From sequence record MW879340.1: 64,000 bases of DNA; one strand, given 5' to 3'. Under the pieces are notes generated by a model. That model had not been told where the DNA came from. It was given only the letters and a program-made list of their open reading frames with translations, and searched no databases. Shown here piece after piece: positions 16,975 through 37,075 of the stretch (the stretch's first letter is position 1; each line of letters begins with the position of its first letter). The position numbers and the translations under genes are program-made.

Positions 16975-17297
16975 GCAGTATTAATCTTGACTCGCCCGGC
17001 AATGTGAAGCTGCGTGAAGTCCTGCAAGACCTGGCGTTAGTACGTAGCCTGGCACAAAGTAATAACCGCCCTGTCAATACAGCTATCCGTAATCGCTGTA
17101 AGGAGATCATCAAAGATCCTAACATGGACAAGATGATCAAAGACGTGGCGTTACACATCAGTCGTAAGACTTTGTGCAGTCATACGCTCACTGTAGCGAT
17201 CTCGTCGTATAACGAAATGGCTAACGGTGAAGTGGAAATGATTCGGGATGGCGAAGTTGTGTCCGTCAACCCGGGTAACCAAAACCCAATCGGGTAA
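16971..17297 (+). CDS. hypothetical protein
   Basis: ATGA overlap with upstream gene. Confidence 0.75.
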   Translation: MSSINLDSPGNVKLREVLQDLALVRSLAQSNNRPVNTAIRNRCKEIIKDPNMDKMIKDVALHISRKTLCSHTLTVAISSYNEMANGEVEMIRDGEVVSVNPGNQNPIG

Positions 17298-17345
17298 TCT
17301 GTAGTATCATCCAATTACGGGCAATGTGACCCCTAAGGAAATGAA

Positions 17346-18074
17346 ATGAAAATCGATTATGCATTTGACTTTACGTTGGCCAAAAATACTGTTCCTGCGA
17401 CTGAGAAACATAAGTCCCATCATGTGCTCGAACGGGCGAGTTTGGAAATCAATGATTATCTGTTCGAGGTCACATTAGACCAAGAGATGGTGTCAAAGAT
17501 TAATGCATCTGATTTTGATGATTTAAAGTATCGTTATCATTACCGTCTTTGTCGTGGTGCTGACTTGGTTGCATCAGGCAAGGTACGTTCTTGCCAAAAC
17601 ATGCCGACCACAAACGGCCGTCGTATCTTTTCATTAGACCACGTCGGTGGTTTAATTAATGAAATCATGCACGAGGCCATCGGTAGTATGATACTGAGTG
17701 ATGTCGCTGCTTACACACCTGAACTTGAACAACTTAAGTTCTTTGAACAGGTCAGCGCTGCAACGAGTTTTACTGCCGGCGTAAACAACTCTGGTGCCAT
17801 CGGTACTCCGCGATTTGTTATGGCGGTCTCAACCGACATCCCGCACCTACGTGGCGGTCGTCGTTTTAGCATATCACGCGACGGCGGTATCCAACGTATT
17901 ACGGGTGTGACAACCACCTGGGTTTATAACCTGGGCGACCAGACCGCGCCAGGTGATGAACCACGTTTGTTGTTCAGAGATCGCGTTGAAGGTGAGAACT
18001 TTACGTTCACACCGATGACCGACAAAGAAGCGTTGGTCAAAATCAAAGCCTATGCAAAGGCATTGAGCGCATAA
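17346..18074 (+). CDS. hypothetical protein
   Basis: 242-aa ORF, AAGGA RBS, followed by a terminator. Confidence 0.8.
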   Translation: MKIDYAFDFTLAKNTVPATEKHKSHHVLERASLEINDYLFEVTLDQEMVSKINASDFDDLKYRYHYRLCRGADLVASGKVRSCQNMPTTNGRRIFSLDHVGGLINEIMHEAIGSMILSDVAAYTPELEQLKFFEQVSAATSFTAGVNNSGAIGTPRFVMAVSTDIPHLRGGRRFSISRDGGIQRITGVTTTWVYNLGDQTAPGDEPRLLFRDRVEGENFTFTPMTDKEALVKIKAYAKALSA

Positions 18075-18087
18075 CCACCTATTAACC

Positions 18088-18116
18088 AGAGGGGATTCGT
18101 CCCCTCTTTTTTTTTT
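18088..18116 (+). terminator. intrinsic terminator
   Basis: AGAGGGGA-TTCG-TCCCCTCT plus poly-T. Confidence 0.9.
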
Positions 18117-18132
18117 GATTAAGGACTTCATT

Positions 18133-18459
18133 ATGTCACAGGCATTAAACCAAGAGTTGTTCACCCAGGTCTTTATTAACGGCGCTCGTTTCGATCCAAT
18201 CAGCGTTGGGATCAGTGACCAGACCGTTGTGGAAGGTCAGCCCGGTGCACTCGACTTCCCTAAGGCCGTTGACCTGCTGAAAGAAGCGTACAACCATCGT
18301 CACAACCCAGAGCGTGACAAGATCATTATCCTGGGCATGCTGGACACCATCAAAGCAGAACTGCCAACAGCCAACCTGCATTACAGCCGCAGTATCTCGC
18401 TGGGTGATGTAACTCTCCAGTACACCGTTGCTGTCCGCCCTGCTAAATCAGCAGAATAA
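18133..18459 (+). CDS. hypothetical protein
   Basis: ATG 18133 with AAGGA RBS. Confidence 0.75.
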   Translation: MSQALNQELFTQVFINGARFDPISVGISDQTVVEGQPGALDFPKAVDLLKEAYNHRHNPERDKIIILGMLDTIKAELPTANLHYSRSISLGDVTLQYTVAVRPAKSAE

Positions 18460-18495
18460 TTGTATACGACTAACCAGTAAAAGAAAGGATGTACG

Positions 18496-18681
18496 ATGAG
18501 TGGTAAAGACCTGAGCAGCTACCTGCAAGAACCTGCCAAGCCAGCCAGCGATGACCTGGATATGGGTGCGTTAGCCAGCATGGATTTCAGCGCGGTAGAA
18601 GAACGCGTTGAACAAATGCAGGAAGGCGGTGGTGAAGTGGTTGAAGCAGACAATGACTGCGTCGACGGTTGTAAGATCTAA
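18496..18681 (+). CDS. 61-aa acidic protein ending in CVDGCKI, resembling the RNR alpha C-terminal redox tail
   Basis: AAGGA RBS, own terminator; C-terminus DNDCVDGCKI vs E. coli NrdA DDGCESGACKI. Confidence 0.75.
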   Translation: MSGKDLSSYLQEPAKPASDDLDMGALASMDFSAVEERVEQMQEGGGEVVEADNDCVDGCKI

Positions 18682-18687
18682 ACATAC

Positions 18688-18718
18688 GGGTCGGGCTTCG
18701 GTCCGGCCCTTATGCCGG
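18688..18718 (+). terminator. hairpin + TTATGCCG terminator-like element
   Basis: GGGTCGGGC-TTCG-GTCCGGCCC then TTATGCCGG. Confidence 0.75.
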
Positions 18719-18757
18719 CTGATGATATGTGTTGACTAATAAACACAAGGAGGAAAT

Positions 18758-19483
18758 ATGAACGGTGTAAAGGTGTCGGAGTTGGAGCCCGCTACCGCAC
18801 TCAGTGAAACGGATCTACTCTACATTATCCGTAAGAGTGTAGAAGGCGGAATGGAATCAAAGAGAGCGTCGCTTGGTGACTTGCTTAGCATGCTTGGGTC
18901 GGCTGGCTCAAAGGGTCTGGAACGAATTCAGCTTGGTAACAAAACCCAGCAAGAGTTCAATGATTTGTTCAATGCGCAGTTGATCGCTGAGAAGCCAGAA
19001 CACCCAACCTGTACAATGATGATGGTGCTTGAAAGTCTGGAGAACGGTGCCCAGGGGTCTATGGGGTCGATCACGGTTTTTCCAACATCAGAAGGCAAGT
19101 ACGTACTGGGATCGGGATTGAATGCGCTGGGTGACGGTAACTTAGGCATTGCCTTATTGTTTATCCCTAACGATCTGACCGACGGCGTATCCATGCTTTG
19201 TTGGTTCTCCCCCTTCTCAATGAACACTGGCGGCACGTCAGGTAAAGATGGTAATAGTGTTACGTTGAAAGGCAGCTTTGATAATTTCAACGATTTACCT
19301 TTACCGGGCGATAACCAGATAGGCGACTGCTGGTTCGTCAAAACAACGCTCTATTGTTGGGATGGCGGTAACTGGATTAACCTAGGCGATTTTGGTGGGC
19401 CTCAAGGTGAGAAAGGTGTTGATGCTGTCGGTATTGCCGATATCACTATCACCACCACACCGTACCTGATCCCTGATCCTTAA
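18758..19483 (+). CDS. putative tail-fibre-associated protein with collagen-like motif
   Basis: N-terminal VKVSELEPATALSETDLL as seen in fibre proteins; WDGGNWINLGDFGGPQGEKG module; AGGAGG RBS. Confidence 0.7.
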   Translation: MNGVKVSELEPATALSETDLLYIIRKSVEGGMESKRASLGDLLSMLGSAGSKGLERIQLGNKTQQEFNDLFNAQLIAEKPEHPTCTMMMVLESLENGAQGSMGSITVFPTSEGKYVLGSGLNALGDGNLGIALLFIPNDLTDGVSMLCWFSPFSMNTGGTSGKDGNSVTLKGSFDNFNDLPLPGDNQIGDCWFVKTTLYCWDGGNWINLGDFGGPQGEKGVDAVGIADITITTTPYLIPDP

Positions 19484-19495
19484 TCGAGGTTACCC

Positions 19496-20254
19496 ATGAC
19501 TGGCGGAACGATAGTAACGTTTAAATTCACGCTGTCCGACGGGACGGTTGTTGAAAAAGAACTTAAAGTAAAAGATGGCAACAACGCATACGAGATGTGG
19601 TTGATCGCCGGGCACTCTGGAACGTTGGACGACTATATTGCTTTTAATAAGGGCGAGAAGGGCGAACAAGGTGAACAGGGGTTGGAAGGGCCGATGGGTC
19701 CTATGTTGGAATTCGTCGGCGTATTCGACACCGTTGAAGAGTTACCTGTTGATGTCAATGTGAACAGCATCGCAACAGTAGGGACTTTCTTCTATTTCTT
19801 CAACGGTAGTGAATGGATTTCGTTGGGTAGCTTTGCGGGTCCACAGGGTGAGAAAGGTGATCCAGGTACGGCAAACTTTGCTATTAAGAGTGGTAACTTC
19901 TCCAGTAACTACTCGAATAACTTAGCGGCCGCTAACGCCCACGGCACTATCGGGGGTAAAGAGTACTGGAAATACACGATAAACTTGGACAAGGCGACGT
20001 ACAACAAGTATCCGGTTTGTAATGTGCTTTTGCAAGAATTGCCTTGTGATGCTAGCGGTGTTCCAGTGCCGTACACGTTGCATTATTTCTTCAACTCGTC
20101 CGGTGCCAATAAACCACCTAACATTGTGTTGATGCTGATTCTGCATGAGCCGGCAACTCAACTGCTGAGCAACACCACAGGACAGTATGGTCCTCTGGGG
20201 TTAGTCGACGACGTACAGTACGAACCGCATTATTCGGTGTCTTACTGGTATTGA
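19496..20254 (+). CDS. collagen-like (Gly-X-Y) fibre protein
   Basis: KGEKGEQGEQGLEGPMGP and FNGSEWISLGSFAGPQGEKGDPG. Confidence 0.75.
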   Translation: MTGGTIVTFKFTLSDGTVVEKELKVKDGNNAYEMWLIAGHSGTLDDYIAFNKGEKGEQGEQGLEGPMGPMLEFVGVFDTVEELPVDVNVNSIATVGTFFYFFNGSEWISLGSFAGPQGEKGDPGTANFAIKSGNFSSNYSNNLAAANAHGTIGGKEYWKYTINLDKATYNKYPVCNVLLQELPCDASGVPVPYTLHYFFNSSGANKPPNIVLMLILHEPATQLLSNTTGQYGPLGLVDDVQYEPHYSVSYWY

Positions 20255-20262
20255 CATAATAC

Positions 20263-20293
20263 AAAGCCAGGCTCGTCCTGGCTTTTATGCCGG
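20263..20293 (+). terminator. hairpin + TTATGCCG terminator-like element
   Basis: AAAGCCAGG-CTCGT-CCTGGCTTT then TATGCCGG. Confidence 0.75.
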
Positions 20294-20340
20294 ACAAGGA
20301 ATGATATGAATTCACTTTAGATATACTTAGGGGCCCTGTT

Positions 20341-21288
20341 ATGCTTGAGCTAATGTTAGCAGGAAATAATAAGCCAATTGTTCCTGAATCGGGACCTGGC
20401 AATAAACAGTTACTAGCGGGCAACCGAACCGATGGCTGGTTTGGTATTATACCTGCGGCCGAAATGCCGTCTCCATTTACTATTGCAACAACATCAGGAT
20501 TATCCGTAACGCTTCCACAAATCAACAACAATCCGCTGACATGGTTAAAAGCAGTACTGGACGGTAAGTACATCTTTTTCTCATCCACTCCGTTTAACAA
20601 CACGACCTTAACCGCGCTTTACAACGCTGGGGTCGTGTACGGCACAGATGACAATGGGTTACGAACCCCAACGGGTTCATCGCCGACCAATCAGCTTAAG
20701 TTGATTGTGTTTAAAGACTCGGCAAATAAAACGTGGTGTTTTAAAATCAGGCTGATCAACACCATCAACCCTAACACCATGACGTCAACGGACACCCCAG
20801 CGTCCACCAGTGTATATGCCGGGGAAATGTACAAGTTGTTCTCCCACATCATGGCTAGCGGTAACGTGCCGCAAGACGGGGTGAAGTGGGATAAGTTTGT
20901 AGCAGGTCGTGAATTCTACAATGACCGCTACCACAGTAATTCGGTGCAGGCGGGTAGTGTGTTCCAGGGCGCGCCAACGTACACCCTTGGTCAGTATGGC
21001 TGGTACGGTGTCGGTGTGTCGGTTAGTTGGATGCCGGTGCTGGAACTTATTAACCCAGACGTTGAGTTGGTTCCGCCAATTGAAGTCACTGGCGCCGCAC
21101 CGAAGATGATGCCGGCTAACGTAAACGCCACATCTAACATTGATGCACTCTCATCGTCGGAGCTGACAATGATATCGAGCACCTTAACACCACCGCTTGA
21201 ATCAGCCCCTGCCTCACCAGAGCCATTATCTGCTGGCGCTGTTAACACAGTCAATGCCCAGTGGCTCCCGCCGCACATGACCAATTAA
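20341..21288 (+). CDS. putative virion/tail protein, cassette 1 gene A
   Basis: MLELMLAG tag; SGPGNKQLLAG..GWFG and WMPVLEL motifs shared with 9 paralogs. Confidence 0.8.
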   Translation: MLELMLAGNNKPIVPESGPGNKQLLAGNRTDGWFGIIPAAEMPSPFTIATTSGLSVTLPQINNNPLTWLKAVLDGKYIFFSSTPFNNTTLTALYNAGVVYGTDDNGLRTPTGSSPTNQLKLIVFKDSANKTWCFKIRLINTINPNTMTSTDTPASTSVYAGEMYKLFSHIMASGNVPQDGVKWDKFVAGREFYNDRYHSNSVQAGSVFQGAPTYTLGQYGWYGVGVSVSWMPVLELINPDVELVPPIEVTGAAPKMMPANVNATSNIDALSSSELTMISSTLTPPLESAPASPEPLSAGAVNTVNAQWLPPHMTN

Positions 21289-21300
21289 TAAGGTACCAGC

Positions 21301-22143
21301 ATGCACATTCATTTAAAATGGGTTAATGCCAACACCCAGCAAACTGTCACGAACATTTATCGTGGCACGACGACGCTTGATCGCAATAACCTAGGAACAC
21401 CGTTGGTGGTATTATCCGCAGGCGAGACCGAGTACTACGACCGCACCGTAGAAGCAGGTACGACCTATTACTACGTCATCGAATACGTTTCTGCCACCAC
21501 ACGAGTCAAATCACGTGTGTACAGCTTCCTGGCTGACTATGTCCGTGGCGCCGGTGGCAACGTAGTGTTGTTCGGTAATGATGATTTCGGTTTCATGGGG
21601 TACGGTACATTCCCATCATACACCGAGATTTTAACTAAGATTGGTGTGGGCCGTGAAACCGCCAGCCCGACAACAGACGCTGCGGTGAATGGTTGTAAAT
21701 TCAGTGTCGCCGGTAAAGTCTATTACTCTGTTTTCTTATCTGGCAGTGCCCTTGATTTTACAACGACACTGGCTTTCCTTAAGCGCACCGATAAACTCCC
21801 AATCACCATTGAGGGTATAAACTATCTGGCTTACCCGCTGGACATGCTGGGTGATGGTTTTGTATGGGACGGAACTTACTCAAGTACGGCACCGGTAGGT
21901 AAACGGGATATGTTCGAATACCTGGTGATTCCGCAATTACCGTCTGTCACGATAGATGGTTCGTGGAAAGGCGATGTGTTGGGTCGTGTCAGCACTCAAG
22001 GGACCAATAGCCCAATGTCAAAAGCGGTTGCGGGTATGGCACGCATTCCATATTGGAACATGACCAACAACACCATAGCCTACGCGGCATCAGCGGTGTC
22101 CTCCCAACTGTTGCACATCGTCTTAGAACTAGTAGAGGCTTAA
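21301..22143 (+). CDS. putative virion/tail protein, cassette 1 gene B (FN3-like N-terminus)
   Basis: IHLKWVN..NIYRG..YYD..GTTYYYVI pattern; ends IVLELVEA. Confidence 0.8.
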   Translation: MHIHLKWVNANTQQTVTNIYRGTTTLDRNNLGTPLVVLSAGETEYYDRTVEAGTTYYYVIEYVSATTRVKSRVYSFLADYVRGAGGNVVLFGNDDFGFMGYGTFPSYTEILTKIGVGRETASPTTDAAVNGCKFSVAGKVYYSVFLSGSALDFTTTLAFLKRTDKLPITIEGINYLAYPLDMLGDGFVWDGTYSSTAPVGKRDMFEYLVIPQLPSVTIDGSWKGDVLGRVSTQGTNSPMSKAVAGMARIPYWNMTNNTIAYAASAVSSQLLHIVLELVEA

Positions 22144-22144
22144 T

Positions 22145-23071
22145 ATGAGCATTACCCTAAATTGGAACAACCGGGGTCAGACCGTCACGGCGGTGAAGAT
22201 TTACCGCGGCACAAGCAGAATGGTGGCGTCAACGTTACTCACCACTATCAACAGTGCTGCGATAACGTATACCGACGACACCGCAGCGAATGACACGCTG
22301 TACTACTACAAAGTGGCGTTGGTAATCAATGGTGAAGAAGTCTCTGGTTCACTTCGCCCAATGGTTGCCTTCACAAACCTTGGTCCGGGCCCGACAACCT
22401 TAATTTCCGGCACCGCTGAATTCGGTTATTTCGGTAAGATGACGCCGCTTGAGTTTTTTACCGGTTCTGGATTACGGTCGGCAGTGGGTACTGCACCCCA
22501 GTACTGGACGAGTTACACCACCGAGATAACATGGTGGCGTAAATACGCGTACTTCGGTAAAATCCTTTACGTGCCGGATCTGCCTATTTACACAACTGCG
22601 TCCGCTAACAACTCTGCGATCAGTGCACTGTACACAGCTGGGATGTTGTATGGACATGGTAAGACAGATAAGAATTCGATCATTACCGTGGCAGCGACTG
22701 TTCAGAACAAAAAGGTCGTCAAGGACAGCTACGAGTTTTTGATTAAGGCCCCGTCTGCTAATATTTATACTGATCCGACGACATCGTTCATGAATCTTAC
22801 GCCTTCTTTGGATTATTACCAGAGTGAAGGGTTTCTTCTTTCGGCTCCGGCATCAACGTATTCGTATTCATCCATTGCATCCGGATTGGCGTTCCCGCGT
22901 GTAACACCGGCCGATACATACGGTGCTACCCTGGGTGGTATGGTTACGCAACACATGGTAACCGCTTCCACGTTTAACGTCCATTATAACTACACGGCCA
23001 GCCGTGCTAACTTGAACTGGACCGCCACCAACACGATTTACTACTTGCCAATTCTGCAATTGGTTCCATAA
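22145..23071 (+). CDS. putative virion/tail protein, cassette 1 gene C (FN3-like N-terminus)
   Basis: ITLNWNN..KIYRG..YTDDTAANDTLYYY; GPGPTTL..GYFG; ends LPILQLVP. Confidence 0.8.
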   Translation: MSITLNWNNRGQTVTAVKIYRGTSRMVASTLLTTINSAAITYTDDTAANDTLYYYKVALVINGEEVSGSLRPMVAFTNLGPGPTTLISGTAEFGYFGKMTPLEFFTGSGLRSAVGTAPQYWTSYTTEITWWRKYAYFGKILYVPDLPIYTTASANNSAISALYTAGMLYGHGKTDKNSIITVAATVQNKKVVKDSYEFLIKAPSANIYTDPTTSFMNLTPSLDYYQSEGFLLSAPASTYSYSSIASGLAFPRVTPADTYGATLGGMVTQHMVTASTFNVHYNYTASRANLNWTATNTIYYLPILQLVP

Positions 23072-23076
23072 CCACC

Positions 23077-23106
23077 AAGCGGGGCTTCGGTCCCGCTTTT
23101 ATGCCG
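23077..23106 (+). terminator. hairpin + TTATGCCG terminator-like element
   Basis: AAGCGGGGC-TTCG-GTCCCGCTT then TTATGCCG. Confidence 0.8.
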
Positions 23107-23148
23107 ATTGATGTTATGTATCCTGTATTTTAATAAGGTTAAGATACC

Positions 23149-24132
23149 ATGCTAGAGATCATCATATTTGGGGGTGCGGGTAACGGAAACTACCTCCCCA
23201 ACTCAGGACCTGGCAATAAGAAAGTACTAAAAGGAAGTAAGCAAAATGGATGGTTCGGGATGATTGATCCCTCGTATATGCCTACCATTCAAGAGGTCGG
23301 GAAGCAAGCCGGCATGATCACCCTGCCTGACTATACAGGGGCTAACCCAGCCAGACCTGCCTGGATGAAAGCCGTGATCGATGACAAGGTTATCTTCCTG
23401 CCTAACGGACCGTGGACTGGTGACATCAGTTATTGGGACTGCTACCGAGCGGGTGTAGTGTTTGGCGTTGACGGTATCAGTCCTGATAATACGAGTAGAC
23501 CTTCTGCGGCACTCAGCAGTTATAACCAGCTCAAGTACGTGGATTGGATTGACCCAACCGGTAAGGCCTGGTTGTTCAAGGTGCGGTTCATTAAGGGGAA
23601 CGCCCCCATCGTTGTAGCGAGTACTGGCGCAGTAAACTCAGACACGTCATCCAACAGTGAAGCGTATCAGCTGTTCTGGCGGACACGTGCGACATCGACC
23701 GCCAGTGAAGCAGAGCGTTGGGATTCGTTGGTATCGGGCGTGGATTATTACCAGTTCCGCTATTTCGACCAGACGTATATCCCTTCTGGTGATAACCGCA
23801 GCATTGGCGGTACGACAGCATTACCGGACGTTGGTCAGTGGTGGGGTGGTGGTTCGACGAACAAGTTCCCGTGGTGTCCGGTACTGGAAGTGGTGTCTCC
23901 GGACGATACTTTCATTTACCCTATCGGTGTCACTTTTGTCACACGGCAATCCACACCGTTAGCGCCAGTGATATCCAGTGATACTCGACTGATGGTTGCG
24001 GGTGATGTTGATCTGCAAAACCAGCGCACGATTCCACTGGCAGCGCTTGTCTCTTCTGATGCCTTTACGGTTGCCAATGCCGTGAGTTTCACTAACATGG
24101 CAGTCGCGCCGATTAACCCAATTATGAGTTGA
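23149..24132 (+). CDS. putative virion/tail protein, cassette 2 gene A
   Basis: MLEIIIFGG tag; NSGPGNKK..GWFG; WCPVLEV; paralog of 20341. Confidence 0.8.
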   Translation: MLEIIIFGGAGNGNYLPNSGPGNKKVLKGSKQNGWFGMIDPSYMPTIQEVGKQAGMITLPDYTGANPARPAWMKAVIDDKVIFLPNGPWTGDISYWDCYRAGVVFGVDGISPDNTSRPSAALSSYNQLKYVDWIDPTGKAWLFKVRFIKGNAPIVVASTGAVNSDTSSNSEAYQLFWRTRATSTASEAERWDSLVSGVDYYQFRYFDQTYIPSGDNRSIGGTTALPDVGQWWGGGSTNKFPWCPVLEVVSPDDTFIYPIGVTFVTRQSTPLAPVISSDTRLMVAGDVDLQNQRTIPLAALVSSDAFTVANAVSFTNMAVAPINPIMS

Positions 24133-24142
24133 GGTAGATAAC

Positions 24143-24976
24143 GTGTATATCGACTTAAAGTGGACCAATGCTAACTCCGGTATGATGAAGACCAATATCT
24201 ACCGTAGCACCACGCCTTTAGACAAAGCCAACCTTGGTACACCGGTTGTCGTGTTAACGAACAACGAAACCACCTGGCGTGATCTGTCCGTGTCTCCTGC
24301 TGTGACGTATTATTACGTCATTGAGTTTGAAGCCAACGACGTTAAAGTTTCTACTCGTGTCTTCACAATGACTGCCAGTTACACACGTGGTCATGGTAAT
24401 GCGACGGTAGTCCTGGGTGATCAAGAATACGGGCTGATGGATCAGGTGGCTGTAGGTCGTATGGTCTCCGTACTGACCTCTGCCGGTTTCTCACAATCAG
24501 GCATGACCGACACCACGTTCGGACCAGGTACTAAGTTCAGTTACAAGAACAAAGTGTATTACGTGATCATGATGCAGGCTAACCTTGTTGGTTCCACCAT
24601 GGCGGCACTGACTCCGTTGTTTAATAACAATGACGGTGTTCCGGTAACGATCGAGGGATTCAACTACCTGTTGCGTCTGGCGAAGGTACTGGGACCAAGC
24701 TGGGATGGGTCTACGAAAGTAACTACCACCACGGACCTGGATGAATTCTACATCAAGTTCGTGCTCCCACAGTTCAGCTTCTTGGCTAACTGGCCGGGCG
24801 AGTCATTGGGTAAGCTTAACAACCTGGCGGCGACTAACATTATCGTTGGACGGGATGTTGTGGCGGGCACTGTTGCTACTCGAGTGGGTCGTAACGCCGC
24901 AGTTACCTGGTCAGCGACCACCACATCGTTAACATCGTCAACGTACGTTCCTTTCATCTTAGAACTGGTGGAGTAA
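24143..24976 (+). CDS. putative virion/tail protein, cassette 2 gene B
   Basis: IDLKWTN..NIYRS..NLGTPVVVL; ends FILELVE; paralog of 21301; GTG start. Confidence 0.8.
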   Translation: MYIDLKWTNANSGMMKTNIYRSTTPLDKANLGTPVVVLTNNETTWRDLSVSPAVTYYYVIEFEANDVKVSTRVFTMTASYTRGHGNATVVLGDQEYGLMDQVAVGRMVSVLTSAGFSQSGMTDTTFGPGTKFSYKNKVYYVIMMQANLVGSTMAALTPLFNNNDGVPVTIEGFNYLLRLAKVLGPSWDGSTKVTTTTDLDEFYIKFVLPQFSFLANWPGESLGKLNNLAATNIIVGRDVVAGTVATRVGRNAAVTWSATTTSLTSSTYVPFILELVE

Positions 24977-24977
24977 C

Positions 24978-25940
24978 ATGGCAATCACATTAAACTGGGC
25001 GAATAAAAACGCCAACGTCACGAACTTTAAAGTGTACCGTGGAACGACCAAGTCTAACCTGGTGTTATTGACCACGTTGTCGAGCTCAGCGACGTCCTAC
25101 ACCGATAATACGGCACAGAACAATACTTTGTACTATTATCAGGTTAACGTCGTTCTAGGAGCGTCTGATGAGGTTCCCGGGGCTATCACGCCACACACCG
25201 CGTTTACCGATACCGGTCCTGGTCCACAGACCTTATTAGCGGGAACGATGGAGTGGGGGTACTTCGGTCAGCTAACCCCGGCCGAGTTCATTCCGGATGC
25301 ACAGTACAAGGCATTGTCAACCACAGGCACGGCATACGGAACAGCGATCACGCTCTGGTGTAAGTTTGCTTATAAAGGCAAGATCCTGTTTGTGGCAGAT
25401 AACCCCTGCCGTAACCAGACCATTGCCCCGTATACCTTTGCGAAGTCGTTGTATAACGAAGGTGTGTATTTAGGTACGGGCGACAGTAGCCTACCACACA
25501 GCTTACTCGGCGTAGGTGCTGCTGCGGTACCTCAGACCAAACGCACTACCGCGGGATCGTATGAATTCATTGTTCGTGCCATGAAAGCTAACGAGACCAC
25601 TCTACCATCAGCGAACGGGCTGTACAACAGTGCCACACCACCTAACCAACGTGAGTCTGTGTTTTCTGAAGCGACGTTGATTGCCTCCGGCAGTAGTGCC
25701 TGGGCGTCTACCGCGGCTTACGTGGCGCAAGGTCTCATGCCAACGAAGTTAGTTGGATCGGGTGCGTTGTTAGGTGTGTATCAGAACAGCTGGCACATCA
25801 CACAGCACTTTACGTCCGCATCGAACTACGCGCTGATGATGGTCAACAACGGGACAGCCACAACCAGCGTGACCGGCATGGCATACGGCACATCTATTGC
25901 GTGTGTGTTCTTACCGGTGCTGGAGTTGGTTACTCCGTAA
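24978..25940 (+). CDS. putative virion/tail protein, cassette 2 gene C
   Basis: ITLNWAN..KVYRGT..YTDNTAQNNTLYYY; GPGPQTL..GYFG; LPVLELV. Confidence 0.8.
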   Translation: MAITLNWANKNANVTNFKVYRGTTKSNLVLLTTLSSSATSYTDNTAQNNTLYYYQVNVVLGASDEVPGAITPHTAFTDTGPGPQTLLAGTMEWGYFGQLTPAEFIPDAQYKALSTTGTAYGTAITLWCKFAYKGKILFVADNPCRNQTIAPYTFAKSLYNEGVYLGTGDSSLPHSLLGVGAAAVPQTKRTTAGSYEFIVRAMKANETTLPSANGLYNSATPPNQRESVFSEATLIASGSSAWASTAAYVAQGLMPTKLVGSGALLGVYQNSWHITQHFTSASNYALMMVNNGTATTSVTGMAYGTSIACVFLPVLELVTP

Positions 25941-28004: not shown

Positions 28005-29330
28005 ATGAGCTCAGGAAAAGCGGTAGTAGAAGACTTCCGTCAGTTAGCACGGGTGGTACGTATCGATGACGTCATTCAGCACCCAAATGCTGACCGTATG
28101 TCTTTAGCCATCATTGGTGGCTGGCAGGTATGCATCAAGTTAGAAGAATTCAAGAAAGGTGATCTGGCGTTGTACTGCGAGATTGACTCTCTGGTGCCAA
28201 CCAGTGTACCAGAGTTTGCCTTCCTGGAAGAACGCAAAGACGGTTTGAAGTCATTCGGCGAACAGACGTACTCGCGCATCAAAACCATCAAGTTGCGTAA
28301 AGAGCTGTCGCAGGGCCTACTGGTCCCAATCCCTCGTCAGCTTGAAACGCCGGTTGAAGAAGGTGATGACCTGACTCAGGCACTGGGTGTGTTGAAGTAT
28401 GAGAAGTCTGCTTCAAAAAACCTGACTTCGGTCGAACCAACTTACAGCCTGTATCATCGTCTGGCGTTGCGTATTCGTGGGCCAGAGGTTGAGCCGCTGC
28501 CGTTCCCAGCATTCTTGCGCAAGTCCGAAGAGAACCGCGTACAGAACTCCTCATCGCAATACCGTCGTGCGGTAGAAGAAGGTGAAGAATTCGAAGTCAC
28601 CGTGAAACTCGATGGTGAATCAATGACCTTGTATTCCGTCATTGATGGCACTGCGGTCCGCACAGGGGTATGTTCACGTAACTGTGAAATCCGTCAGGAC
28701 GATGTGGTATTCACGCCGGTTCAGATGCTGCGTCGCTGGATTGGTGGTCTGATGCTGCGTAACCGGCGTGCATTCAGCTGGCGTCGTATCACATGGCCTA
28801 AAGAAGCAACAACCCCACTGGCCTGGTTACGTGAGTTCCGTGAAAACAATACGCGCTATGACATCCTCAATGTGGGGTTGCCTAGCGTTGAACGTGTTAT
28901 TTCTGCGCTGGATGATCCTTTCTTCAACTACGCTTGCAAGAGCAACGCATTGATGCAACTCGCGTCGGTATCACTGGAAGACCGTTGTGCGTACACCGTG
29001 CAGGGTGAACTGTTCGGTCCTGGTATCCAGGGTAACTATGAAGGCGTGCAAGAAACTTCCTTCAACGTCTACCGTGTCTACGTTGATGGCCGTGATGCGT
29101 TACTGCCTGATGAAGCGCGAGCATTGTGTAAACGCATGGGCCTGAAGTACGTACCGGTTCTTGAAGAACGTACCAAACTGCCAGCTGATATCAAAGAAGC
29201 GCTGGCGAAAGCAGACGGTAAGCGTTACTACTCCGGCAAGCCAAACCGTGAAGGCGTGGTCTACAAATCGTTAGCACGTGACTTCTCGTTTAAAGTTATC
29301 AGCAACAAGTATTTGCTCAGCGAAGACTAA
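28005..29330 (+). CDS. ATP-dependent RNA ligase, DRB0094/Rnl5 family
   Basis: N-terminal HPNADR..GGWQV..Y.EIDS..IKTIKLRKELSQGL; motif I KLDGES; SRN; QGEL.GPGIQGN; REGVV; FKVIS. Confidence 0.9.
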   Translation: MSSGKAVVEDFRQLARVVRIDDVIQHPNADRMSLAIIGGWQVCIKLEEFKKGDLALYCEIDSLVPTSVPEFAFLEERKDGLKSFGEQTYSRIKTIKLRKELSQGLLVPIPRQLETPVEEGDDLTQALGVLKYEKSASKNLTSVEPTYSLYHRLALRIRGPEVEPLPFPAFLRKSEENRVQNSSSQYRRAVEEGEEFEVTVKLDGESMTLYSVIDGTAVRTGVCSRNCEIRQDDVVFTPVQMLRRWIGGLMLRNRRAFSWRRITWPKEATTPLAWLREFRENNTRYDILNVGLPSVERVISALDDPFFNYACKSNALMQLASVSLEDRCAYTVQGELFGPGIQGNYEGVQETSFNVYRVYVDGRDALLPDEARALCKRMGLKYVPVLEERTKLPADIKEALAKADGKRYYSGKPNREGVVYKSLARDFSFKVISNKYLLSED

Positions 29331-29339
29331 GGTTAAATC

Positions 29340-30578
29340 ATGTCTAACATTATTGAATTAGATGGCGTAAACGTCCCCGTTAAAATGTGGACTAAGTTTG
29401 TTCCTGTGGAGGAACGGGCGACGATACAGTTGCACAACATCACAACGCTGCCGTTCATCTTTAAGCATCTTGCCGTAATGCCTGATGTTCATTGGGGGAT
29501 GGGCGCAACGGTTGGGTCGGTTATTGCGACTAAGGGTGCTATCATACCGGCTGCGGTTGGTGTCGATATCGGCTGTGGCATGATTGCTCAACGTACTTCG
29601 TTGACCGCGGCTGACCTGCCTGACAACCTTGGTCCGTTACGTAGCCTCATTGAAGCTAACGTCCCACATGGTCGTACCGATAACGGCGGCGATAATGATC
29701 GTGGTGCGTGGGGTGGTGAATACGCCATGCAGTTAGATCCGGCGCACAAAGATGAGCTGCTGAAGTTGCAGTCTCGTTTAGCCGATATTGTCGGCAAGCA
29801 CCCTAAACTCACTAAAGCTTCAAAACGCTTTACTCGCCACGCAGGTACACTCGGCAGCGGTAACCATTTCGTTGAAATCTGTCTGGACGAAGAAGACCAC
29901 GTATGGGTAATGTTGCATTCTGGTTCACGCGGCATCGGTAACACCATCGGCAAGTACTTCATTGAAAAAGCCAAAGAAGAGATGGCGAAATTCTTCATCC
30001 ATTTGGTTGACCAAGATTTGGCGTACTTACCGGAAGGGTCGTTGTATTACAATGACTATCTTGAAGCGGTCACCTGGGCACAAGACTTCGCGGCGGTTAA
30101 CCGTGCCATCATGCTTAACGCCACGTTAAAGGCGTTGCACAGCACGGTAGGAAAACCTTTCACGGAAAATACCGTTGCGGTTAACTGTCATCACAATTAC
30201 GTCTCAATGGAAAACCATTTTGATACTAACGTGCTGATAACCCGTAAAGGCGCTGTGCGGGCCCGTGTGGGTGACCTGGCAATCATCCCAGGTAGCATGG
30301 GTGCGAAGTCCTTTATTGTTGAAGGGCTTGGTAACCAGGAGAGTTTCTGTTCTTGTTCACATGGGGCTGGTCGTCTGATGTCTCGCAGTGAGGCCAAAAA
30401 CACCTTCAGCATTGAAGACCATGTGCGTGATACCGCAGGTGTCGAATGTCGTAAAGACCGTGATGTTATTGATGAAACGCCGAAAGCGTATAAATCAATC
30501 GATGACGTTATGCGTTCTCAAAACGATCTGGTTAAAATCAAGTACGTGCTTAAACAAGTACTGTGCGTGAAAGGATAA
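29340..30578 (+). CDS. rtcB: RtcB RNA ligase (2',3'-cyclic phosphate/5'-OH)
   Basis: MPDVHWG, DIGCGM, GTLGSGNHF, LHSGSRG, HHNY, RKGA, PGSMG, HGAGR, DETPKAYK. Confidence 0.96.
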   Translation: MSNIIELDGVNVPVKMWTKFVPVEERATIQLHNITTLPFIFKHLAVMPDVHWGMGATVGSVIATKGAIIPAAVGVDIGCGMIAQRTSLTAADLPDNLGPLRSLIEANVPHGRTDNGGDNDRGAWGGEYAMQLDPAHKDELLKLQSRLADIVGKHPKLTKASKRFTRHAGTLGSGNHFVEICLDEEDHVWVMLHSGSRGIGNTIGKYFIEKAKEEMAKFFIHLVDQDLAYLPEGSLYYNDYLEAVTWAQDFAAVNRAIMLNATLKALHSTVGKPFTENTVAVNCHHNYVSMENHFDTNVLITRKGAVRARVGDLAIIPGSMGAKSFIVEGLGNQESFCSCSHGAGRLMSRSEAKNTFSIEDHVRDTAGVECRKDRDVIDETPKAYKSIDDVMRSQNDLVKIKYVLKQVLCVKG

Positions 30579-30581
30579 TCC

Positions 30582-31172
30582 ATGTCAGCTAAATTATTCT
30601 GGCGTTACGCCACCATGAACGCGGGTAAGTCGGCTGAGCTGATCATTGCAGCGCATAATTACGTAGAACGTAAGATGCAACGTATTGTTATCAAGCCAGC
30701 CATAGACACCCGTGATGAACTGGGGAAGGTCAGTAGTCGTATTGGTCTGGCGACTGACGCTATCCTGGTAAATCCAGAAGACGATCTGTTTGAAGTGATC
30801 TGTGTGGCATTGCGCGATCAACCAAAGGCGATGTGTGTCTTTGTAGACGAAGCGCAGTTCTTGTCAGCTAAGCAGGTAGGTCAGTTAGCCAAGGTGGTGG
30901 ACATTATTCACCTGCCGGTTATTGCTTACGGGTTACGTAGTGATTTCCAGGGTAATCTCTTTCCTGGTTCAGCTGCACTGTTTGCTGCTGCTAACGAGAT
31001 GACAGAGATTCGTACAGTTTGTCATTGCGGTCGTCGCGCCACTCACGTGCTGCGTTACAATGCGGATGGCGATGTTGTTAAGGAAGGCCCTCAGGTAGAG
31101 ATTGGTGGAAACGATCGCTACGAAGCGGTGTGTCGTAAGCACCATGCAGGACCGATGGGTTATTATGATTAA
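30582..31172 (+). CDS. tdk: thymidine kinase
   Basis: TMNAGKS, KVSSRIG, VDEAQF, YGLRSDF, C.CGR.A, QVEIGGNDRY..VCRKH. Confidence 0.96.
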   Translation: MSAKLFWRYATMNAGKSAELIIAAHNYVERKMQRIVIKPAIDTRDELGKVSSRIGLATDAILVNPEDDLFEVICVALRDQPKAMCVFVDEAQFLSAKQVGQLAKVVDIIHLPVIAYGLRSDFQGNLFPGSAALFAAANEMTEIRTVCHCGRRATHVLRYNADGDVVKEGPQVEIGGNDRYEAVCRKHHAGPMGYYD

Positions 31173-35338: not shown

Positions 35339-37075
35339 ATGACCGATACCACTGTATTCGACCCTACCGACAAAAAGCTGGAAATCAGAACTGGTGAGAA
35401 CCAGGTGTCTTTGCACTTCGGTGAATACCTGGTGGCACATTGTGCGACCCAGGGCTGTGACCAATGGTCCGACACGAAGATCCTGGCGTACTTCTACCTG
35501 GAAGCGCTGTATCGTCGTGGTTGTGTCATGAACCACATGTTCAGCGAAAGTATCTTCACGCTGATTCTGAACACGCTGCATGCTTCTGGTCATGACGACT
35601 TTGTATCGGCCGACTGGGCTGATGTGAAGTATGAAACATCTTCAGCTACTGCAACCAGTGTAGCAGTGTATGTCACCGTCACCACCACTGATGGCTTTGA
35701 CATCACGCTGAACTACATGACACCTGGTCTGGCCTGGCAGCAGCTGGTTGTTACCCATGCGGAAGAAGTTCCGACCATGGACGAGTTGTATGATCGTCTG
35801 AAAGGTAAAGGTAACGAAGAGTGGACCAGCCTCGGTACGTTGATTCACGACGGCATCGTCTACAACTACGATGCAGCGGCCACGGCGCTCTTCACCATGA
35901 AGAACCGTCTGGAGATCATCATCGAAGGTGGTGACTTGATCTATTCCGATGCGGAAGCACAAGGTCACGGCCTGATTGAAGTGCTGATGGATCTGTACCG
36001 TAAGCTGCAACTGCGTATGAACTACGGTGAGATTGACATGCTCTCTGCTGAACACATCCAGCTGGTTCAGTCTAACCTGGGTAAACTGCTGACCGATGTA
36101 TTTGCCATGGGCGAATACCTGGAGCTGGCAGACAATACATCACACACCATCCGTGGTTCAGTGAGCGAAGACATTCTCTGTACCATCAGTCACACGTACA
36201 TTGCCGAAGCGGGTAAGATCCGTGCTGACTTCCGTTTCTTGACCATGGCGCAGAACTGGTCGGTTGAACGCAGTGAAGCATTCGATGTTGATGGCATGCC
36301 GGTTTACGTGGATGCGGTGTATAACCAACATGCGGCGCAGATCCGTGCTGGCCTGGGCCTGGACGTTGTTGATCAGCCTGCTCAAACGCTGGCAGACATT
36401 CCGTTTGAAAATCGTGAAGTGGGCAACGACTTTGTTCAACCGCAATACGCCGAACCGGTCTTTACACCTGTCTCCAATGAAGAGCTGATGATGGAAGATC
36501 CGGACAACGCAGTAGCCGGTGATCCACTGGTCGTGACTGCGGTGGCTGCTGTAGGTCCACATGGCGGTATCGGCATGGGCAGTGATCTGCTGTGGCGTAT
36601 TAAAGAAGACCTGCAATTCTTCAAACAGGTAACGACGAACCACGTGGTCATCATGGGTCGTAAGACTTTTGAATCCATCGGTAAGCCATTACCAAATCGC
36701 CAGAACATTGTTATCACCCGTGATCCGGAATACGTACTGAACCTGTACACTCCGGAAAACGATCAGCAGTACGATAACCTGCATTGCGCAACCAGCATCG
36801 AAGAAGCGGTACTGTTGGGTGGTCGTTTGGCTGCACAGGTGTACGGTAACAACGAGCTGATGGTAATCGGCGGTGGCGAGATCTACAAAGAGTTCCTGCC
36901 GATGACGTCTAAGGTGTTCTTGACTTACGTTAAGGGCGATGACAGCCATGCTGATGTGTACTTCCCGATCACTTCGGAAGACATCGGCATGTACTGGACT
37001 CCTCAGATTCTGGCAGAAGGTCTGGAAGAAGACGGCGTGCAGTACGATCGCTTTGTCCTGACCCGTAAACAATAA
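35339..37075 (+). CDS. folA: dihydrofolate reductase fused to a ~395-aa unknown acidic N-terminal region
   Basis: AVAAVGPHGGIG..LLWRIKEDLQFFK..VIMGRKTFESIGKPLPNRQNIVITR..VIGGGEIY..ADVYFP. Confidence 0.92.
   Translation: MTDTTVFDPTDKKLEIRTGENQVSLHFGEYLVAHCATQGCDQWSDTKILAYFYLEALYRRGCVMNHMFSESIFTLILNTLHASGHDDFVSADWADVKYETSSATATSVAVYVTVTTTDGFDITLNYMTPGLAWQQLVVTHAEEVPTMDELYDRLKGKGNEEWTSLGTLIHDGIVYNYDAAATALFTMKNRLEIIIEGGDLIYSDAEAQGHGLIEVLMDLYRKLQLRMNYGEIDMLSAEHIQLVQSNLGKLLTDVFAMGEYLELADNTSHTIRGSVSEDILCTISHTYIAEAGKIRADFRFLTMAQNWSVERSEAFDVDGMPVYVDAVYNQHAAQIRAGLGLDVVDQPAQTLADIPFENREVGNDFVQPQYAEPVFTPVSNEELMMEDPDNAVAGDPLVVTAVAAVGPHGGIGMGSDLLWRIKEDLQFFKQVTTNHVVIMGRKTFESIGKPLPNRQNIVITRDPEYVLNLYTPENDQQYDNLHCATSIEEAVLLGGRLAAQVYGNNELMVIGGGEIYKEFLPMTSKVFLTYVKGDDSHADVYFPITSEDIGMYWTPQILAEGLEEDGVQYDRFVLTRKQ

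What the first reader, a model, noticed from the sequence alone, without database searches (positions are those of the whole stretch)
18496..18681. Free-standing ribonucleotide-reductase C-terminal redox arm?
Seen: a 61-aa acidic, probably disordered protein with its own RBS and terminator, ending ...EADNDCVDGCKI-stop. Established: class Ia/II RNR alpha subunits end in a flexible acidic tail with a Cys pair (E. coli NrdA ...DDGCESGACKI, C754/C759) that carries electrons from thioredoxin or glutaredoxin to the active site. Inference: a split RNR whose swinging arm is a separate gene acting in trans, or a decoy or redox shuttle for host Trx/Grx. No nrdA is present in this window.
Basis: partly seen in the sequence, partly recalled or inferred. 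Interest (0 to 1): 0.75.

Follow-up and report, generated by a model that had tools for sequence, protein, structure and literature searches.

The report
Phage copy of host RNR tail
A jumbo phage that has no ribonucleotide reductase of its own encodes a small, floppy, acidic protein whose end copies the cysteine-bearing tail of its host's reductase, so it probably taps the host's supply line for DNA building blocks.

Summary
The ORF is real: 18496-18681 (+), 61 aa, 15 acidic and 4 basic residues, own RBS, followed by a strong hairpin that lacks a T-run. The window is Erwinia phage pEa_SNUABM_48, a 294-kb chimallin-encoding jumbo phage.

The protein belongs to a family of at least 40 distinct sequences, found in 74 jumbo-phage records from Enterobacterales. 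All 40 end in Cys-x(2-4)-Cys-x-[I/L]-stop. Three end in exactly the last eight residues of E. coli and Erwinia NrdA (CESGACKI), and 12 more match 7 of 8.

The whole phage genome has no RNR. That rules out the reading of a split phage NrdA.

In close relatives the module is fused to the upstream gene (18133-18459). In other phages it is fused to a different domain. Neither domain has conserved cysteines.

Best reading: a mimic of the host NrdA redox tail that host thioredoxin or glutaredoxin can reduce and that exchanges with host NrdA. Whether it helps or blocks the enzyme is not settled. A related phage, PCH45, carries both this module and an orphan host-like NrdB but no NrdA, which leans towards helping.

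A likeness of the N-terminus to the NrdB tail is only suggestive (p about 0.01-0.05). I found no description of this in the literature searched.

The parts
18088..18107 (+). Terminator-like hairpin followed by a T-run. It closes the preceding gene and marks the start of a two-gene unit.
18133..18459 (+). Partner gene pEaSNUABM48_00102 (108 aa, 'domain A'). It is predicted with confidence as a small alpha/beta domain of unknown function without conserved Cys. In close relatives it is fused in one polypeptide with the tail module. Here the two genes are in the same reading frame, separated by two in-frame stops and a short spacer.
18484..18489 (+). Ribosome-binding site AAAGGA, 6 nt before the ATG.
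18496..18681 (+). The finding: a 61-aa acidic, largely disordered protein (pEaSNUABM48_00103). The end coordinate includes the stop codon.
18505..18525 (+). N-terminal motif K-D-L-S-S-Y-L (residues 4-10). The family form is [KR]D[LV][ST]x[YF][LF], present in 17 of 40 members. It resembles the SSYL (Tyr356) stretch of the NrdB tail, but the likeness is suggestive only.
18550..18573 (+). Acidic-hydrophobic motif DDLDMGAL (residues 19-26). The family form is [DE][DE][FLM]D[ILM]x[AG]L. Compare the DDLS[ND]FQL end of NrdB (weak likeness).
18583..18621 (+). Conserved DF..AV..RVE.MQ segment (residues 30-42), whose C-terminal part (residues 34-43) is the one longer predicted helix.
18625..18645 (+). 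Near-invariant GGGEVVE hinge (residues 44-50). GG[GAM]E is present in 37 of 40 members.
18658..18678 (+). Cys-pair tail C-V-D-G-C-K-I (residues 55-61), one residue shorter than the C-E-S-G-A-C-K-I end of host NrdA.
18683..18714 (+). Stem-loop after the stop codon (UUCG tetraloop, -21 kcal/mol) with no T-run.

Best explanation
The protein is a phage-made mimic of the flexible C-terminal redox tail of the host's class Ia ribonucleotide reductase alpha subunit (NrdA).

Shown:
- It is a real, conserved, acidic and largely disordered module of about 45-60 aa.
- Its last residues copy the NrdA terminus, with a Cys pair followed by two residues and then the stop.
- It occurs free-standing or fused to unrelated small domains that lack conserved Cys.
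- This phage has no RNR and no recognisable thioredoxin or glutaredoxin.

Inferred:
- Because it carries the same terminal motif, the tail is reduced by the host's thioredoxin 1 or glutaredoxin 1.
- It can exchange thiol and disulfide with the active-site Cys pair of host NrdA. It would then work as an extra arm acting in trans in the relay Trx/Grx -> tail -> NrdA active site.
- The upstream acidic-hydrophobic motifs and the short helix would dock it on its target.
- The net effect is most likely to sustain or speed host dNDP synthesis for a 294-kb phage that depends on host NrdA.

How sure: I put about 0.7 on the target (the host RNR/Trx/Grx relay) and about 0.4-0.45 on the direction (support rather than block).
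For: - E. coli NrdA ends ...DDGCESGACKI. So do Erwinia pyrifoliae, Erwinia tracheiphila and 107 of 120 Enterobacterales NrdA clusters; 10 more end CEGGACKI.
- In the phage family of 40 sequences, the last 8 residues match NrdA at 8 of 8 in 3 members, at 7 of 8 in 12 and at 6 of 8 in 9. Both Cys are invariant, the last residue is I in 38 and L in 2, and the penultimate residue is K in 28.
- I searched a family HMM against 1577 phage ORFs plus about 100 NrdA and 2 NrdB. After the gene itself, the top 40 rows listed were all NrdA C-termini, aligned end to end (12.4 bits).
- Both Cys are kept although their spacing varies from 2 to 4. This points to disulfide chemistry rather than mere docking.
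- The genome has no RNR. tblastn and phmmer with E. coli NrdA and NrdB find nothing with E < 0.06. Pfam finds no RNR family in any of the 94 ORFs of 300 aa or more.
- The phage has thymidylate synthase, DHFR and thymidine kinase, so it needs host RNR.
- No CGPC- or CPYC-type motif occurs in any ORF, and only 4 small ORFs have any CxxC.
- The fusion partners (domains A and B) have no conserved Cys, so the arm has no cognate site in cis.
- Serratia phage PCH45 carries the module plus an orphan NrdB 80% identical to E. coli NrdB, and no NrdA. That phage therefore invests in running host NrdA.
- All 74 phage records with the module are jumbo phages of 210-307 kb, and all but one name an Enterobacterales host whose NrdA has this tail. 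The exception is labelled Stenotrophomonas, and its copy is 97.8% identical to that of Klebsiella phage Miami.
- Established knowledge: Trx or Grx reduce the C-terminal Cys pair, which then reduces the active site (abstracts of PMC5704485 and PMC4078304).
Against: - The match to NrdA covers only 8-11 residues. Pfam, NCBIfam, BLASTP and HMMER against the PDB never return NrdA as a hit.
- The window's own tail is one residue shorter (Cx3C), and ungapped it matches only 3 of 8.
- Tail variants do not follow the host finely. Erwinia phages carry CEGGGCKI, CEGGACKI or CVDGCKI, while Erwinia NrdA has CESGACKI.
- No binding, reduction or structural evidence exists, and the tools could not model a complex.
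- In phage phiR1-37 the homolog g117 has very low transcript levels: 3.9, 1.5 and 1.2 against hundreds to thousands for its neighbours.
- The gene sits between genes of unknown function and tail-fibre-like genes, not among the nucleotide-metabolism genes.
- A tail that docks on NrdA could equally block the enzyme.
Confidence: 0.45

Rival explanations
1. Competitive decoy or inhibitor. The free tail, helped by NrdB-tail-like docking motifs, occupies thioredoxin or glutaredoxin, or the NrdA active-site channel and beta-tail groove. It thereby slows host RNR, much as yeast Sml1 interferes with regeneration of R1 by its own C-terminus.
For: - It rests on the same tail identity as the best explanation.
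- The N-terminal SSYL...DDL....L arrangement resembles the NrdB tail SSYL-x10-DDLS[ND]FQL.
- The best local alignment of the N-terminal 32 aa against the whole of E. coli NrdB falls in that tail, with shuffle p of 0.015-0.024.
- Sml1 is a precedent; the reference to Zhang et al. 2007 was seen in PMC4078304.
Against: - The phage lacks RNR and needs host dNDP synthesis for a 294-kb genome.
- PCH45 carries the module together with an intact-looking host-like NrdB, which makes shutting down NrdA hard to explain.
- The NrdB-tail likeness is weak. hhalign gives P = 0.045, the likeness is not significant for several homologs, and the motif is absent from 23 of 40 members.
- A thiol/disulfide decoy with no electron sink does not drain reductant.
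Confidence: 0.25
2. A handle that recruits host thioredoxin or glutaredoxin to the partner domains (domain A, domain B or others) for a purpose unrelated to RNR. This would be comparable to T7 DNA polymerase using host thioredoxin.
For: - The module is fused to at least two unrelated domains and to a collagen-like protein.
- Fused and split forms occur among close relatives (69-77% identity in domain A), so the partner and the tail work together.
Against: - In PCH45 the tail stands alone where a relative has domain B plus the tail. In Miami, phiR1-37 and the phage of P0008 it is also free-standing. The tail is therefore the constant part and the partners are optional.
- The partner domains have no function assigned by Pfam, by PDB sequence search or (domain A) by fold search.
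Confidence: 0.12
3. An acidic peptide with another role, whose Cys-pair ending resembles NrdA by convergence. Examples are a head or scaffold propeptide cut at the conserved G-G-E site by the phiKZ-type prohead protease, or a metal-binding tail.
For: - The protein is strongly acidic and disordered, like phage internal peptides.
- GGGE is near-invariant. That this fits the S/A/G-x-E cleavage rule of the phiKZ protease is my own recollection, not a tool result.
- The gene lies next to tail-fibre-like genes.
Against: - This does not explain why the last eight residues equal the host NrdA terminus in several members, nor why the match ends at the stop codon in both.
- No virion proteome data were found.
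Confidence: 0.12
4. A ribosomally made peptide precursor: a leader ending in a Gly-Gly-type site, followed by a Cys-containing core.
For: - The sequence has a GGG followed by a 15-16-residue core with one Ser and two Cys.
- Some members have long N-terminal domains, as some precursor families do.
Against: - No modifying enzyme or peptidase-transporter family appeared in the Pfam scan of all ORFs of 300 aa or more.
- The genomic contexts differ between phages.
- The NrdA identity is left unexplained.
Confidence: 0.03
5. A functionless remnant of a decayed phage nrdA gene.
For: Only the tail resembles NrdA, as a 3' remnant might.
Against: - Nothing upstream resembles NrdA.
- The module is conserved, with invariant Cys and Gly, across 74 phage records and 28 clusters at 50% identity.
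- It has its own RBS and has been fused to other domains.
Confidence: 0.03

Closest known systems
C-terminal redox tail of class Ia RNR alpha (E. coli NrdA, Cys754/Cys759)
   Same: It is acidic and flexible. It has a Cys pair followed by two residues and the stop. Some family members carry the identical terminal octapeptide.
   Different: It is not attached to an RNR catalytic body. A phage without RNR encodes it. The 35-50 residues before the tail are unrelated to NrdA. The window copy has Cx3C instead of Cx4C.
Yeast Sml1 (a small disordered protein that interferes with regeneration of R1 by its own C-terminus)
   Same: It is a small disordered protein that would act on the tail-dependent regeneration step of RNR.
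   Different: No sequence relation was found. Sml1 does not copy the Cys tail, and it is a cellular regulator, not a viral protein. What I say about Sml1 is from my own knowledge plus the reference seen.
Peptides copying the C-terminus of the RNR small subunit, which compete with it for the large subunit
   Same: The principle is the same: a copied RNR subunit tail acting in trans. The N-terminal SSYL/DDL motifs faintly resemble the NrdB tail.
   Different: Those peptides are laboratory tools. Here the clear mimicry concerns the alpha tail, and the beta-tail likeness is not significant for most members.
Orphan host-like NrdB genes in phages (PCH45, Ea35-70 group, phiEcoM-GJ1 group)
   Same: A phage supplies one part that must work with host NrdA. 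PCH45 has both the orphan NrdB and the tail module.
   Different: Those are complete beta subunits with clear homology. This is a short linear motif on a disordered peptide.
PHROG family phrog_10239 (unknown function)
   Same: Residues 17-61 match the whole 47-position profile, end to end (E = 6e-4).
   Different: The family carries no annotation, so the match adds no function.

Membership tests
Class Ia RNR alpha subunit (NrdA) | Catalytic ten-stranded barrel (Pfam Ribonuc_red_lgC), N-terminal domain and ATP-cone | tested here: not met
   No Pfam or NCBIfam hit for the 61-aa protein or its family. BLASTP against E. coli NrdA finds nothing meaningful.
Class Ia RNR alpha subunit (NrdA) | Flexible acidic C-terminal tail ending in a Cys pair plus two residues | tested here: met
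   Identity is 8/8 in 3 members and 7/8 in 12. The window copy has one residue fewer between the Cys.
Class Ia RNR alpha subunit (NrdA) | Tail reduced by thioredoxin or glutaredoxin and able to reduce the active-site disulfide | not testable with these tools
   No complex modelling or biochemistry was available.
   The whole 294,405-bp genome has no NrdA or NrdB by tblastn or phmmer. No RNR Pfam family occurs in the 94 ORFs of 300 aa or more.
NrdB C-terminal tail mimic | Tyr356-type motif followed by the acidic-hydrophobic alpha-binding end | tested here: inconclusive
   SSYL-x8-DDLDMGAL in the window protein against SSYL-x10-DDLS[ND]FQL in NrdB. hhalign gives P = 0.045. Shuffle tests give p of 0.015-0.5 depending on the homolog. 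The motif is present in 17 of 40 members.
Thioredoxin-fold oxidoreductases | Trx fold with a CxxC active site | tested here: not met
   The protein is predicted disordered and has no Pfam hit.
Ribosomal peptide precursors (double-glycine leader type) | Neighbouring modifying enzyme and peptidase-transporter genes | tested here: not met
   None among the Pfam hits of the genome's large ORFs. Neighbours vary between phages.
phrog_10239 | Match to the family profile | tested here: met
   E = 6e-4, 21.3 bits, residues 17-61 to profile positions 3-47 of 47. The match is weak but runs end to end.

The most novel reading that the evidence does not exclude
Jumbo phages of Enterobacterales carry a portable, disordered 'spare arm' that combines copies of both RNR subunit tails: a beta-tail-like docking motif and the alpha-tail Cys pair. 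With it the phage plugs into host NrdA and rewires host deoxynucleotide synthesis without encoding any reductase. This would be the first natural case of a viral short-motif mimic of an enzyme's swinging redox arm.
Probability: 0.3. Interest if true: 0.85.

Novelty: new variant of a known kind. Interest (0 to 1): 0.7.

Why it matters
RNR sets the supply of DNA precursors, and its alpha tail is the only route for electrons from thioredoxin or glutaredoxin to the active site. A conserved phage family that copies exactly this tail, in phages that lack RNR, would be a new way for a virus to control host nucleotide metabolism. Together with the orphan NrdB genes of related phages, it suggests that nucleus-forming jumbo phages run the host alpha subunit with phage-made accessories. 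It would also be a natural example of an enzyme's swinging arm working as a separate, portable module. That bears on the old question of whether RNR tails act in trans. Finally, it gives a first functional lead for an unannotated small-protein family (phrog_10239) found in at least 74 sequenced phages.

Tried and rejected
1. Split phage RNR: rejected, because the genome has no RNR.

2. General homology searches of the 61-aa protein and its family (Pfam, NCBIfam, PDB by HMMER, BLASTP against NrdA and NrdB): no named hit. The chance hits near E = 1-2 (a poly(A) polymerase, a flagellar switch protein, PaaZ) were ignored.

3. NrdB-tail mimicry of the N-terminus: kept only as a lead.

4. A second NrdB-tail-like C-terminus elsewhere in the genome: none.

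5. A phage thioredoxin or glutaredoxin: no CGPC- or CPYC-type motif, and only 4 small ORFs with any CxxC. This was a motif scan, not a profile scan of the small ORFs.

6. Function of partner domains A and B: no Pfam or PDB sequence hit. Domain A folds with confidence (pLDDT above 90) but has no informative PDB neighbour (best E = 0.017, TM 0.2-0.3). It matches only uncharacterised jumbo-phage proteins in BFVD.

7. Conserved neighbourhood: not conserved beyond close relatives.

8. IMG/VR scan: only 5 loci, all of them the cultured phages.

9. Fine matching of tail variant to host: not seen.

10. Literature on a phage RNR-tail mimic: nothing found.

11. Peptide-precursor and decayed-gene readings: rejected (see the rival explanations).

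I left those two sequences out altogether and used an alignment of permitted proteins only.

Full report
**Where the window comes from**

Bases 17000-20500 are 100% identical to Erwinia phages pEa_SNUABM_48 (MW879340.1, 294,405 bp) and pEa_SNUABM_37. A window coordinate equals the record coordinate minus 62,000. Every CDS in the record is annotated 'hypothetical protein'. Pfam finds a phiKZ-type major capsid protein (E = 1.8e-215), chimallin (4.6e-35), a divergent family B DNA polymerase, multisubunit RNA polymerase pieces and phiKZ internal head proteins. The phage is therefore a nucleus-forming, phiKZ-like jumbo phage.

**The observation**

- The ORF at 18496-18681 (+) exists as described. 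It has 61 aa and ends ...EADNDCVDGCKI. It is annotated as pEaSNUABM48_00103.
- It has 15 acidic and 4 basic residues.
- An AAAGGA lies 6 nt before the ATG.
- After the stop comes a stem-loop with a UUCG loop (-21 kcal/mol) but no T-run.
- AlphaFold2 with 25 homologs gives pLDDT 50-70 throughout and pTM 0.21. It predicts two short helices (residues 23-27 and 34-43) and a coil over the last 18 residues.

**The family**

- The word-indexed protein search found 7 close relatives of 59-62 aa. The N-terminus MSGKDLS, the GGGEVV motif, both Cys and the final Ile are invariant among them.
- A profile search of 1.84 billion representatives found 28 clusters.
- tblastn found the module in 74 phage records. 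All are 210-307 kb. The hosts are Erwinia, Dickeya, Klebsiella, Raoultella, Serratia (PCH45), Yersinia (phiR1-37 g117) and Salmonella. One record is labelled Stenotrophomonas but is 97.8% identical to Klebsiella phage Miami in this gene.
- In 40 distinct sequences both Cys are always present. They are followed by exactly two residues and the stop.
- The Cys spacing is 4 in 33 sequences, 3 in 5 and 2 in 2. The last residue is I in 38 and L in 2. The penultimate residue is K in 28. GG[GAM]E is present in 37.
- The module also matches phrog_10239, which has no known function, end to end (E = 6e-4).

**Comparison with NrdA**

I fetched E. coli K-12 nrdAB by an accession shown in papers.

- NrdA ends ...DDGCESGACKI, with Cys at 754 and 759 of 761 residues.
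- Of 120 Enterobacterales NrdA clusters, 107 end CESGACKI and 10 end CEGGACKI. Erwinia pyrifoliae and E. tracheiphila are among those ending CESGACKI.
- The phage family ends CESGACKI in 3 members, CEGGACKI in 5, CEGGGCKI in 6 and CDGGGCKI in 5.
- Against the last eight residues of NrdA, identity is 8/8 in 3 members, 7/8 in 12 and 6/8 in 9.
- I ran a family HMM against 1577 ORFs of this phage plus about 100 NrdA and 2 NrdB. It returns the gene itself, and the next 40 hits listed are all NrdA C-termini. These align from model positions 50/51-61 to NrdA residues 750/751-761, end to end on both sides (12.4 bits).
- The window protein's own C-terminus ranks first of 1577 ORFs against the last 12 residues of Erwinia NrdA (z = 6.8).

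Two cautions apply.

- The loose Cys-pair pattern alone is found in 8 of 5031 frames of this genome. The single sequence is therefore weak evidence, and the family is what carries the argument.
- No general search (Pfam, NCBIfam, BLASTP, HMMER against the PDB) returns NrdA.

This is a shared short motif of 8-11 residues. It is not membership of the NrdA family, and I cannot tell capture from convergence.

**No phage RNR**

- tblastn and phmmer with E. coli NrdA and NrdB against the whole genome give nothing with E < 0.06.
- Pfam scans of all 94 ORFs of 300 aa or more show thymidylate synthase, DHFR, DNA ligase, RtcB, RNase H and others, but no RNR family. The nine families not printed all have E > 1.5e-10.
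- Thymidine kinase lies at 30582-31172, and a DHFR-containing protein at 35339-37075.

The reading of a tail-less phage NrdA complemented in trans is therefore refuted for this phage. Limits: ORFs under 300 aa were tested only against class Ia sequences.

**Partners**

- The upstream gene (18133-18459, 108 aa) and the finding lie between a terminator-like hairpin with a T-run (18088-18107) and the hairpin after the finding.
- The two genes are in the same frame. Two in-frame stops and a short spacer with the RBS separate them.
- In relatives with 69-75% identity in this domain (P0162, P0019), and in more distant ones (P0010, P0012, P0013), the two are one polypeptide. This is a recent fission or fusion and links the two genes functionally.
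- Other phages fuse the same tail to an unrelated domain of about 180 aa (P0015, P0016, P0018, P0026, P0025, and Salmonella phage SPLA10) or to a collagen-like protein (P0035).
- In PCH45 the 49-aa tail stands alone at the position where a relative has domain B plus the tail.
- The tail is also free-standing in Miami, in phiR1-37 and in the phage of P0008.
- The tail module is therefore the constant unit, and the N-terminal domains are optional.
- Neither domain has conserved Cys, so the arm has no redox partner in cis.
- Domain A is predicted with confidence (pLDDT 91-98 over residues 1-100) as a small alpha/beta domain. The attached tail is of low confidence.
- The domain A model has no informative PDB neighbour. 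It matches only uncharacterised proteins of other jumbo phages.
- No Trx- or Grx-like motif was found in any ORF of the phage.

**The NrdB tail lead**

- E. coli NrdB ends ...[24 protein letters not shown], where the Tyr is Tyr356.
- The Erwinia tails end ...NADDLSDFQL and ...ANDFDDFQL.
- The window protein has SSYL at residues 7-10 and, 8 residues later, DDLDMGAL.
- Its best local alignment to the whole of NrdB falls on residues 352-371, with shuffle p of 0.015-0.024. hhalign gives P = 0.045.
- Several homologs are not significant, and the N-terminal motif is present in only 17 of 40 members.

I keep this as a suggestive lead, no more.

**Orphan NrdB in related phages**

- I read the whole PCH45 genome. 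It has an NrdB 80% identical to E. coli NrdB with an intact-looking tail, and no NrdA.
- Host-like NrdB genes (73-76% identity to the PCH45 NrdB) also occur in Ea35-70, RAY, Simmy50, Special G, AH04, AH06, pEt-SU, OBP, Kc263 and Survivor, and in the 52-kb phiEcoM-GJ1 group.
- None of these appear among the best phage NrdA matches.
- The Ea35-70 nrdB has no nrdA beside it.

Phages of this group thus supply parts that can only work with host NrdA. PCH45 has both the orphan NrdB and the tail module, which makes a helper role for the module more likely than a blocking role.

**Expression hint**

In phiR1-37 RNA-seq (PMC4848604, Table S2), g117 has mean values of 3.91, 1.51 and 1.16 (early, middle, late). 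Its neighbours have hundreds to tens of thousands. Expression is very low and skewed to early times. This counts somewhat against an abundant shuttle, at least in that phage.

**Mechanism**

- Shown: the motif identity, the invariance of both Cys, the disorder, the portability of the module, the absence of phage RNR, and the absence of recognisable Trx/Grx motifs in the phage.
- Established: Trx or Grx reduce the C-terminal Cys pair of RNR alpha, which then reduces the active-site disulfide (PMC5704485 and PMC4078304, seen).
- Inferred: the phage tail is accepted by the same host reductants and by the host NrdA active site, so it takes part in that relay in trans.

A thiol/disulfide peptide without an electron sink cannot drain reductant, so a mediator role is the simplest consequence. 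Blocking would require tight docking. I put about 0.7 on the host RNR relay being the target, and 0.4-0.45 on support rather than inhibition.

**Novelty**

Four literature searches found no description of a phage protein copying an RNR tail. Viral mimicry of short host motifs, and RNR tails acting in trans, are both known ideas. I therefore file this as a new variant of a known kind.

- While thinking, and before fetching the sequences, I recalled from memory the terminal octapeptide of E. coli NrdA, part of the NrdB C-terminus, and a short small-subunit peptide inhibitor. Every sequence used or quoted here comes from tool outputs.
- The cleavage rule of the phiKZ protease and the properties of Sml1 are from my own knowledge.
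I dropped those sequences and did not resend them.
- The E. pyrifoliae assembly I read carries one frameshift in nrdB. I read the frames as they stand and repaired nothing.

Noticed in passing
L018:27784-28890 (Serratia phage PCH45, record 124783-125889); also hits H84-H141: Orphan host-like NrdB genes (73-80% identical to enterobacterial NrdB, tail intact) occur in PCH45, the Ea35-70/RAY group, OBP, pEt-SU, Kc263 and the 52-kb phiEcoM-GJ1 group. PCH45 has no nrdA (tested on the whole genome). None of the others appear among the best phage NrdA matches.
   Followed up: partly
window 18758-25940: A run of seven consecutive genes (241-327 aa). The first two have collagen-like G-x-x repeats and match tail-fibre PHROGs, and the third matches a virion structural protein family. 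In a distant relative (L010) only one such gene stands between the small gene and the thymidine kinase region.
   Followed up: partly
window 28005-31172: An RNA-repair-like trio lies directly before thymidine kinase (30582-31172). It consists of an RNA ligase with a PHA02142 OB-fold (28005-29330) and RtcB (29340-30578).
   Followed up: no
window 35339-37075: A 578-aa protein in which only residues 399-545 match DHFR. The roughly 390 N-terminal residues have no Pfam match. A 540-aa counterpart exists in the relative L010.
   Followed up: no
L014:6338-7469 (Erwinia pyrifoliae assembly GCA_041015235.1): nrdB is interrupted by one frameshift in this assembly and was not called as a gene. This may be an assembly error or a pseudogene. 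It was read as it stands and not repaired.
   Followed up: no
L010:2358-3344 and L028:1526-2809: Proteins with a Pfam AcrVA2-like domain lie a few kb upstream of the tail module in two metagenomic relatives.
   Followed up: no
hit H187 (OR529409.1, 'Stenotrophomonas phage BUCTxx100'): Its copy of the small gene is 97.8% identical to that of Klebsiella phage Miami. All other carriers infect Enterobacterales, so the host label looks doubtful.
   Followed up: no
L027:1459-1614 (Yersinia phage phiR1-37 g117): This family member lacks the GGG hinge but keeps ...EVVEASDECDGGGCKI. It is annotated with its own RBS and rho-independent terminator. Its transcript level in published RNA-seq is very low.
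   Followed up: partly
window 18133-18459 (domain A): The domain A fold recurs in uncharacterised proteins of about 100 aa in other jumbo phages (Mortimer, Special G, FBKp24, GAP32, PhiEaH1, Eowyn), apparently without the tail.
   Followed up: no
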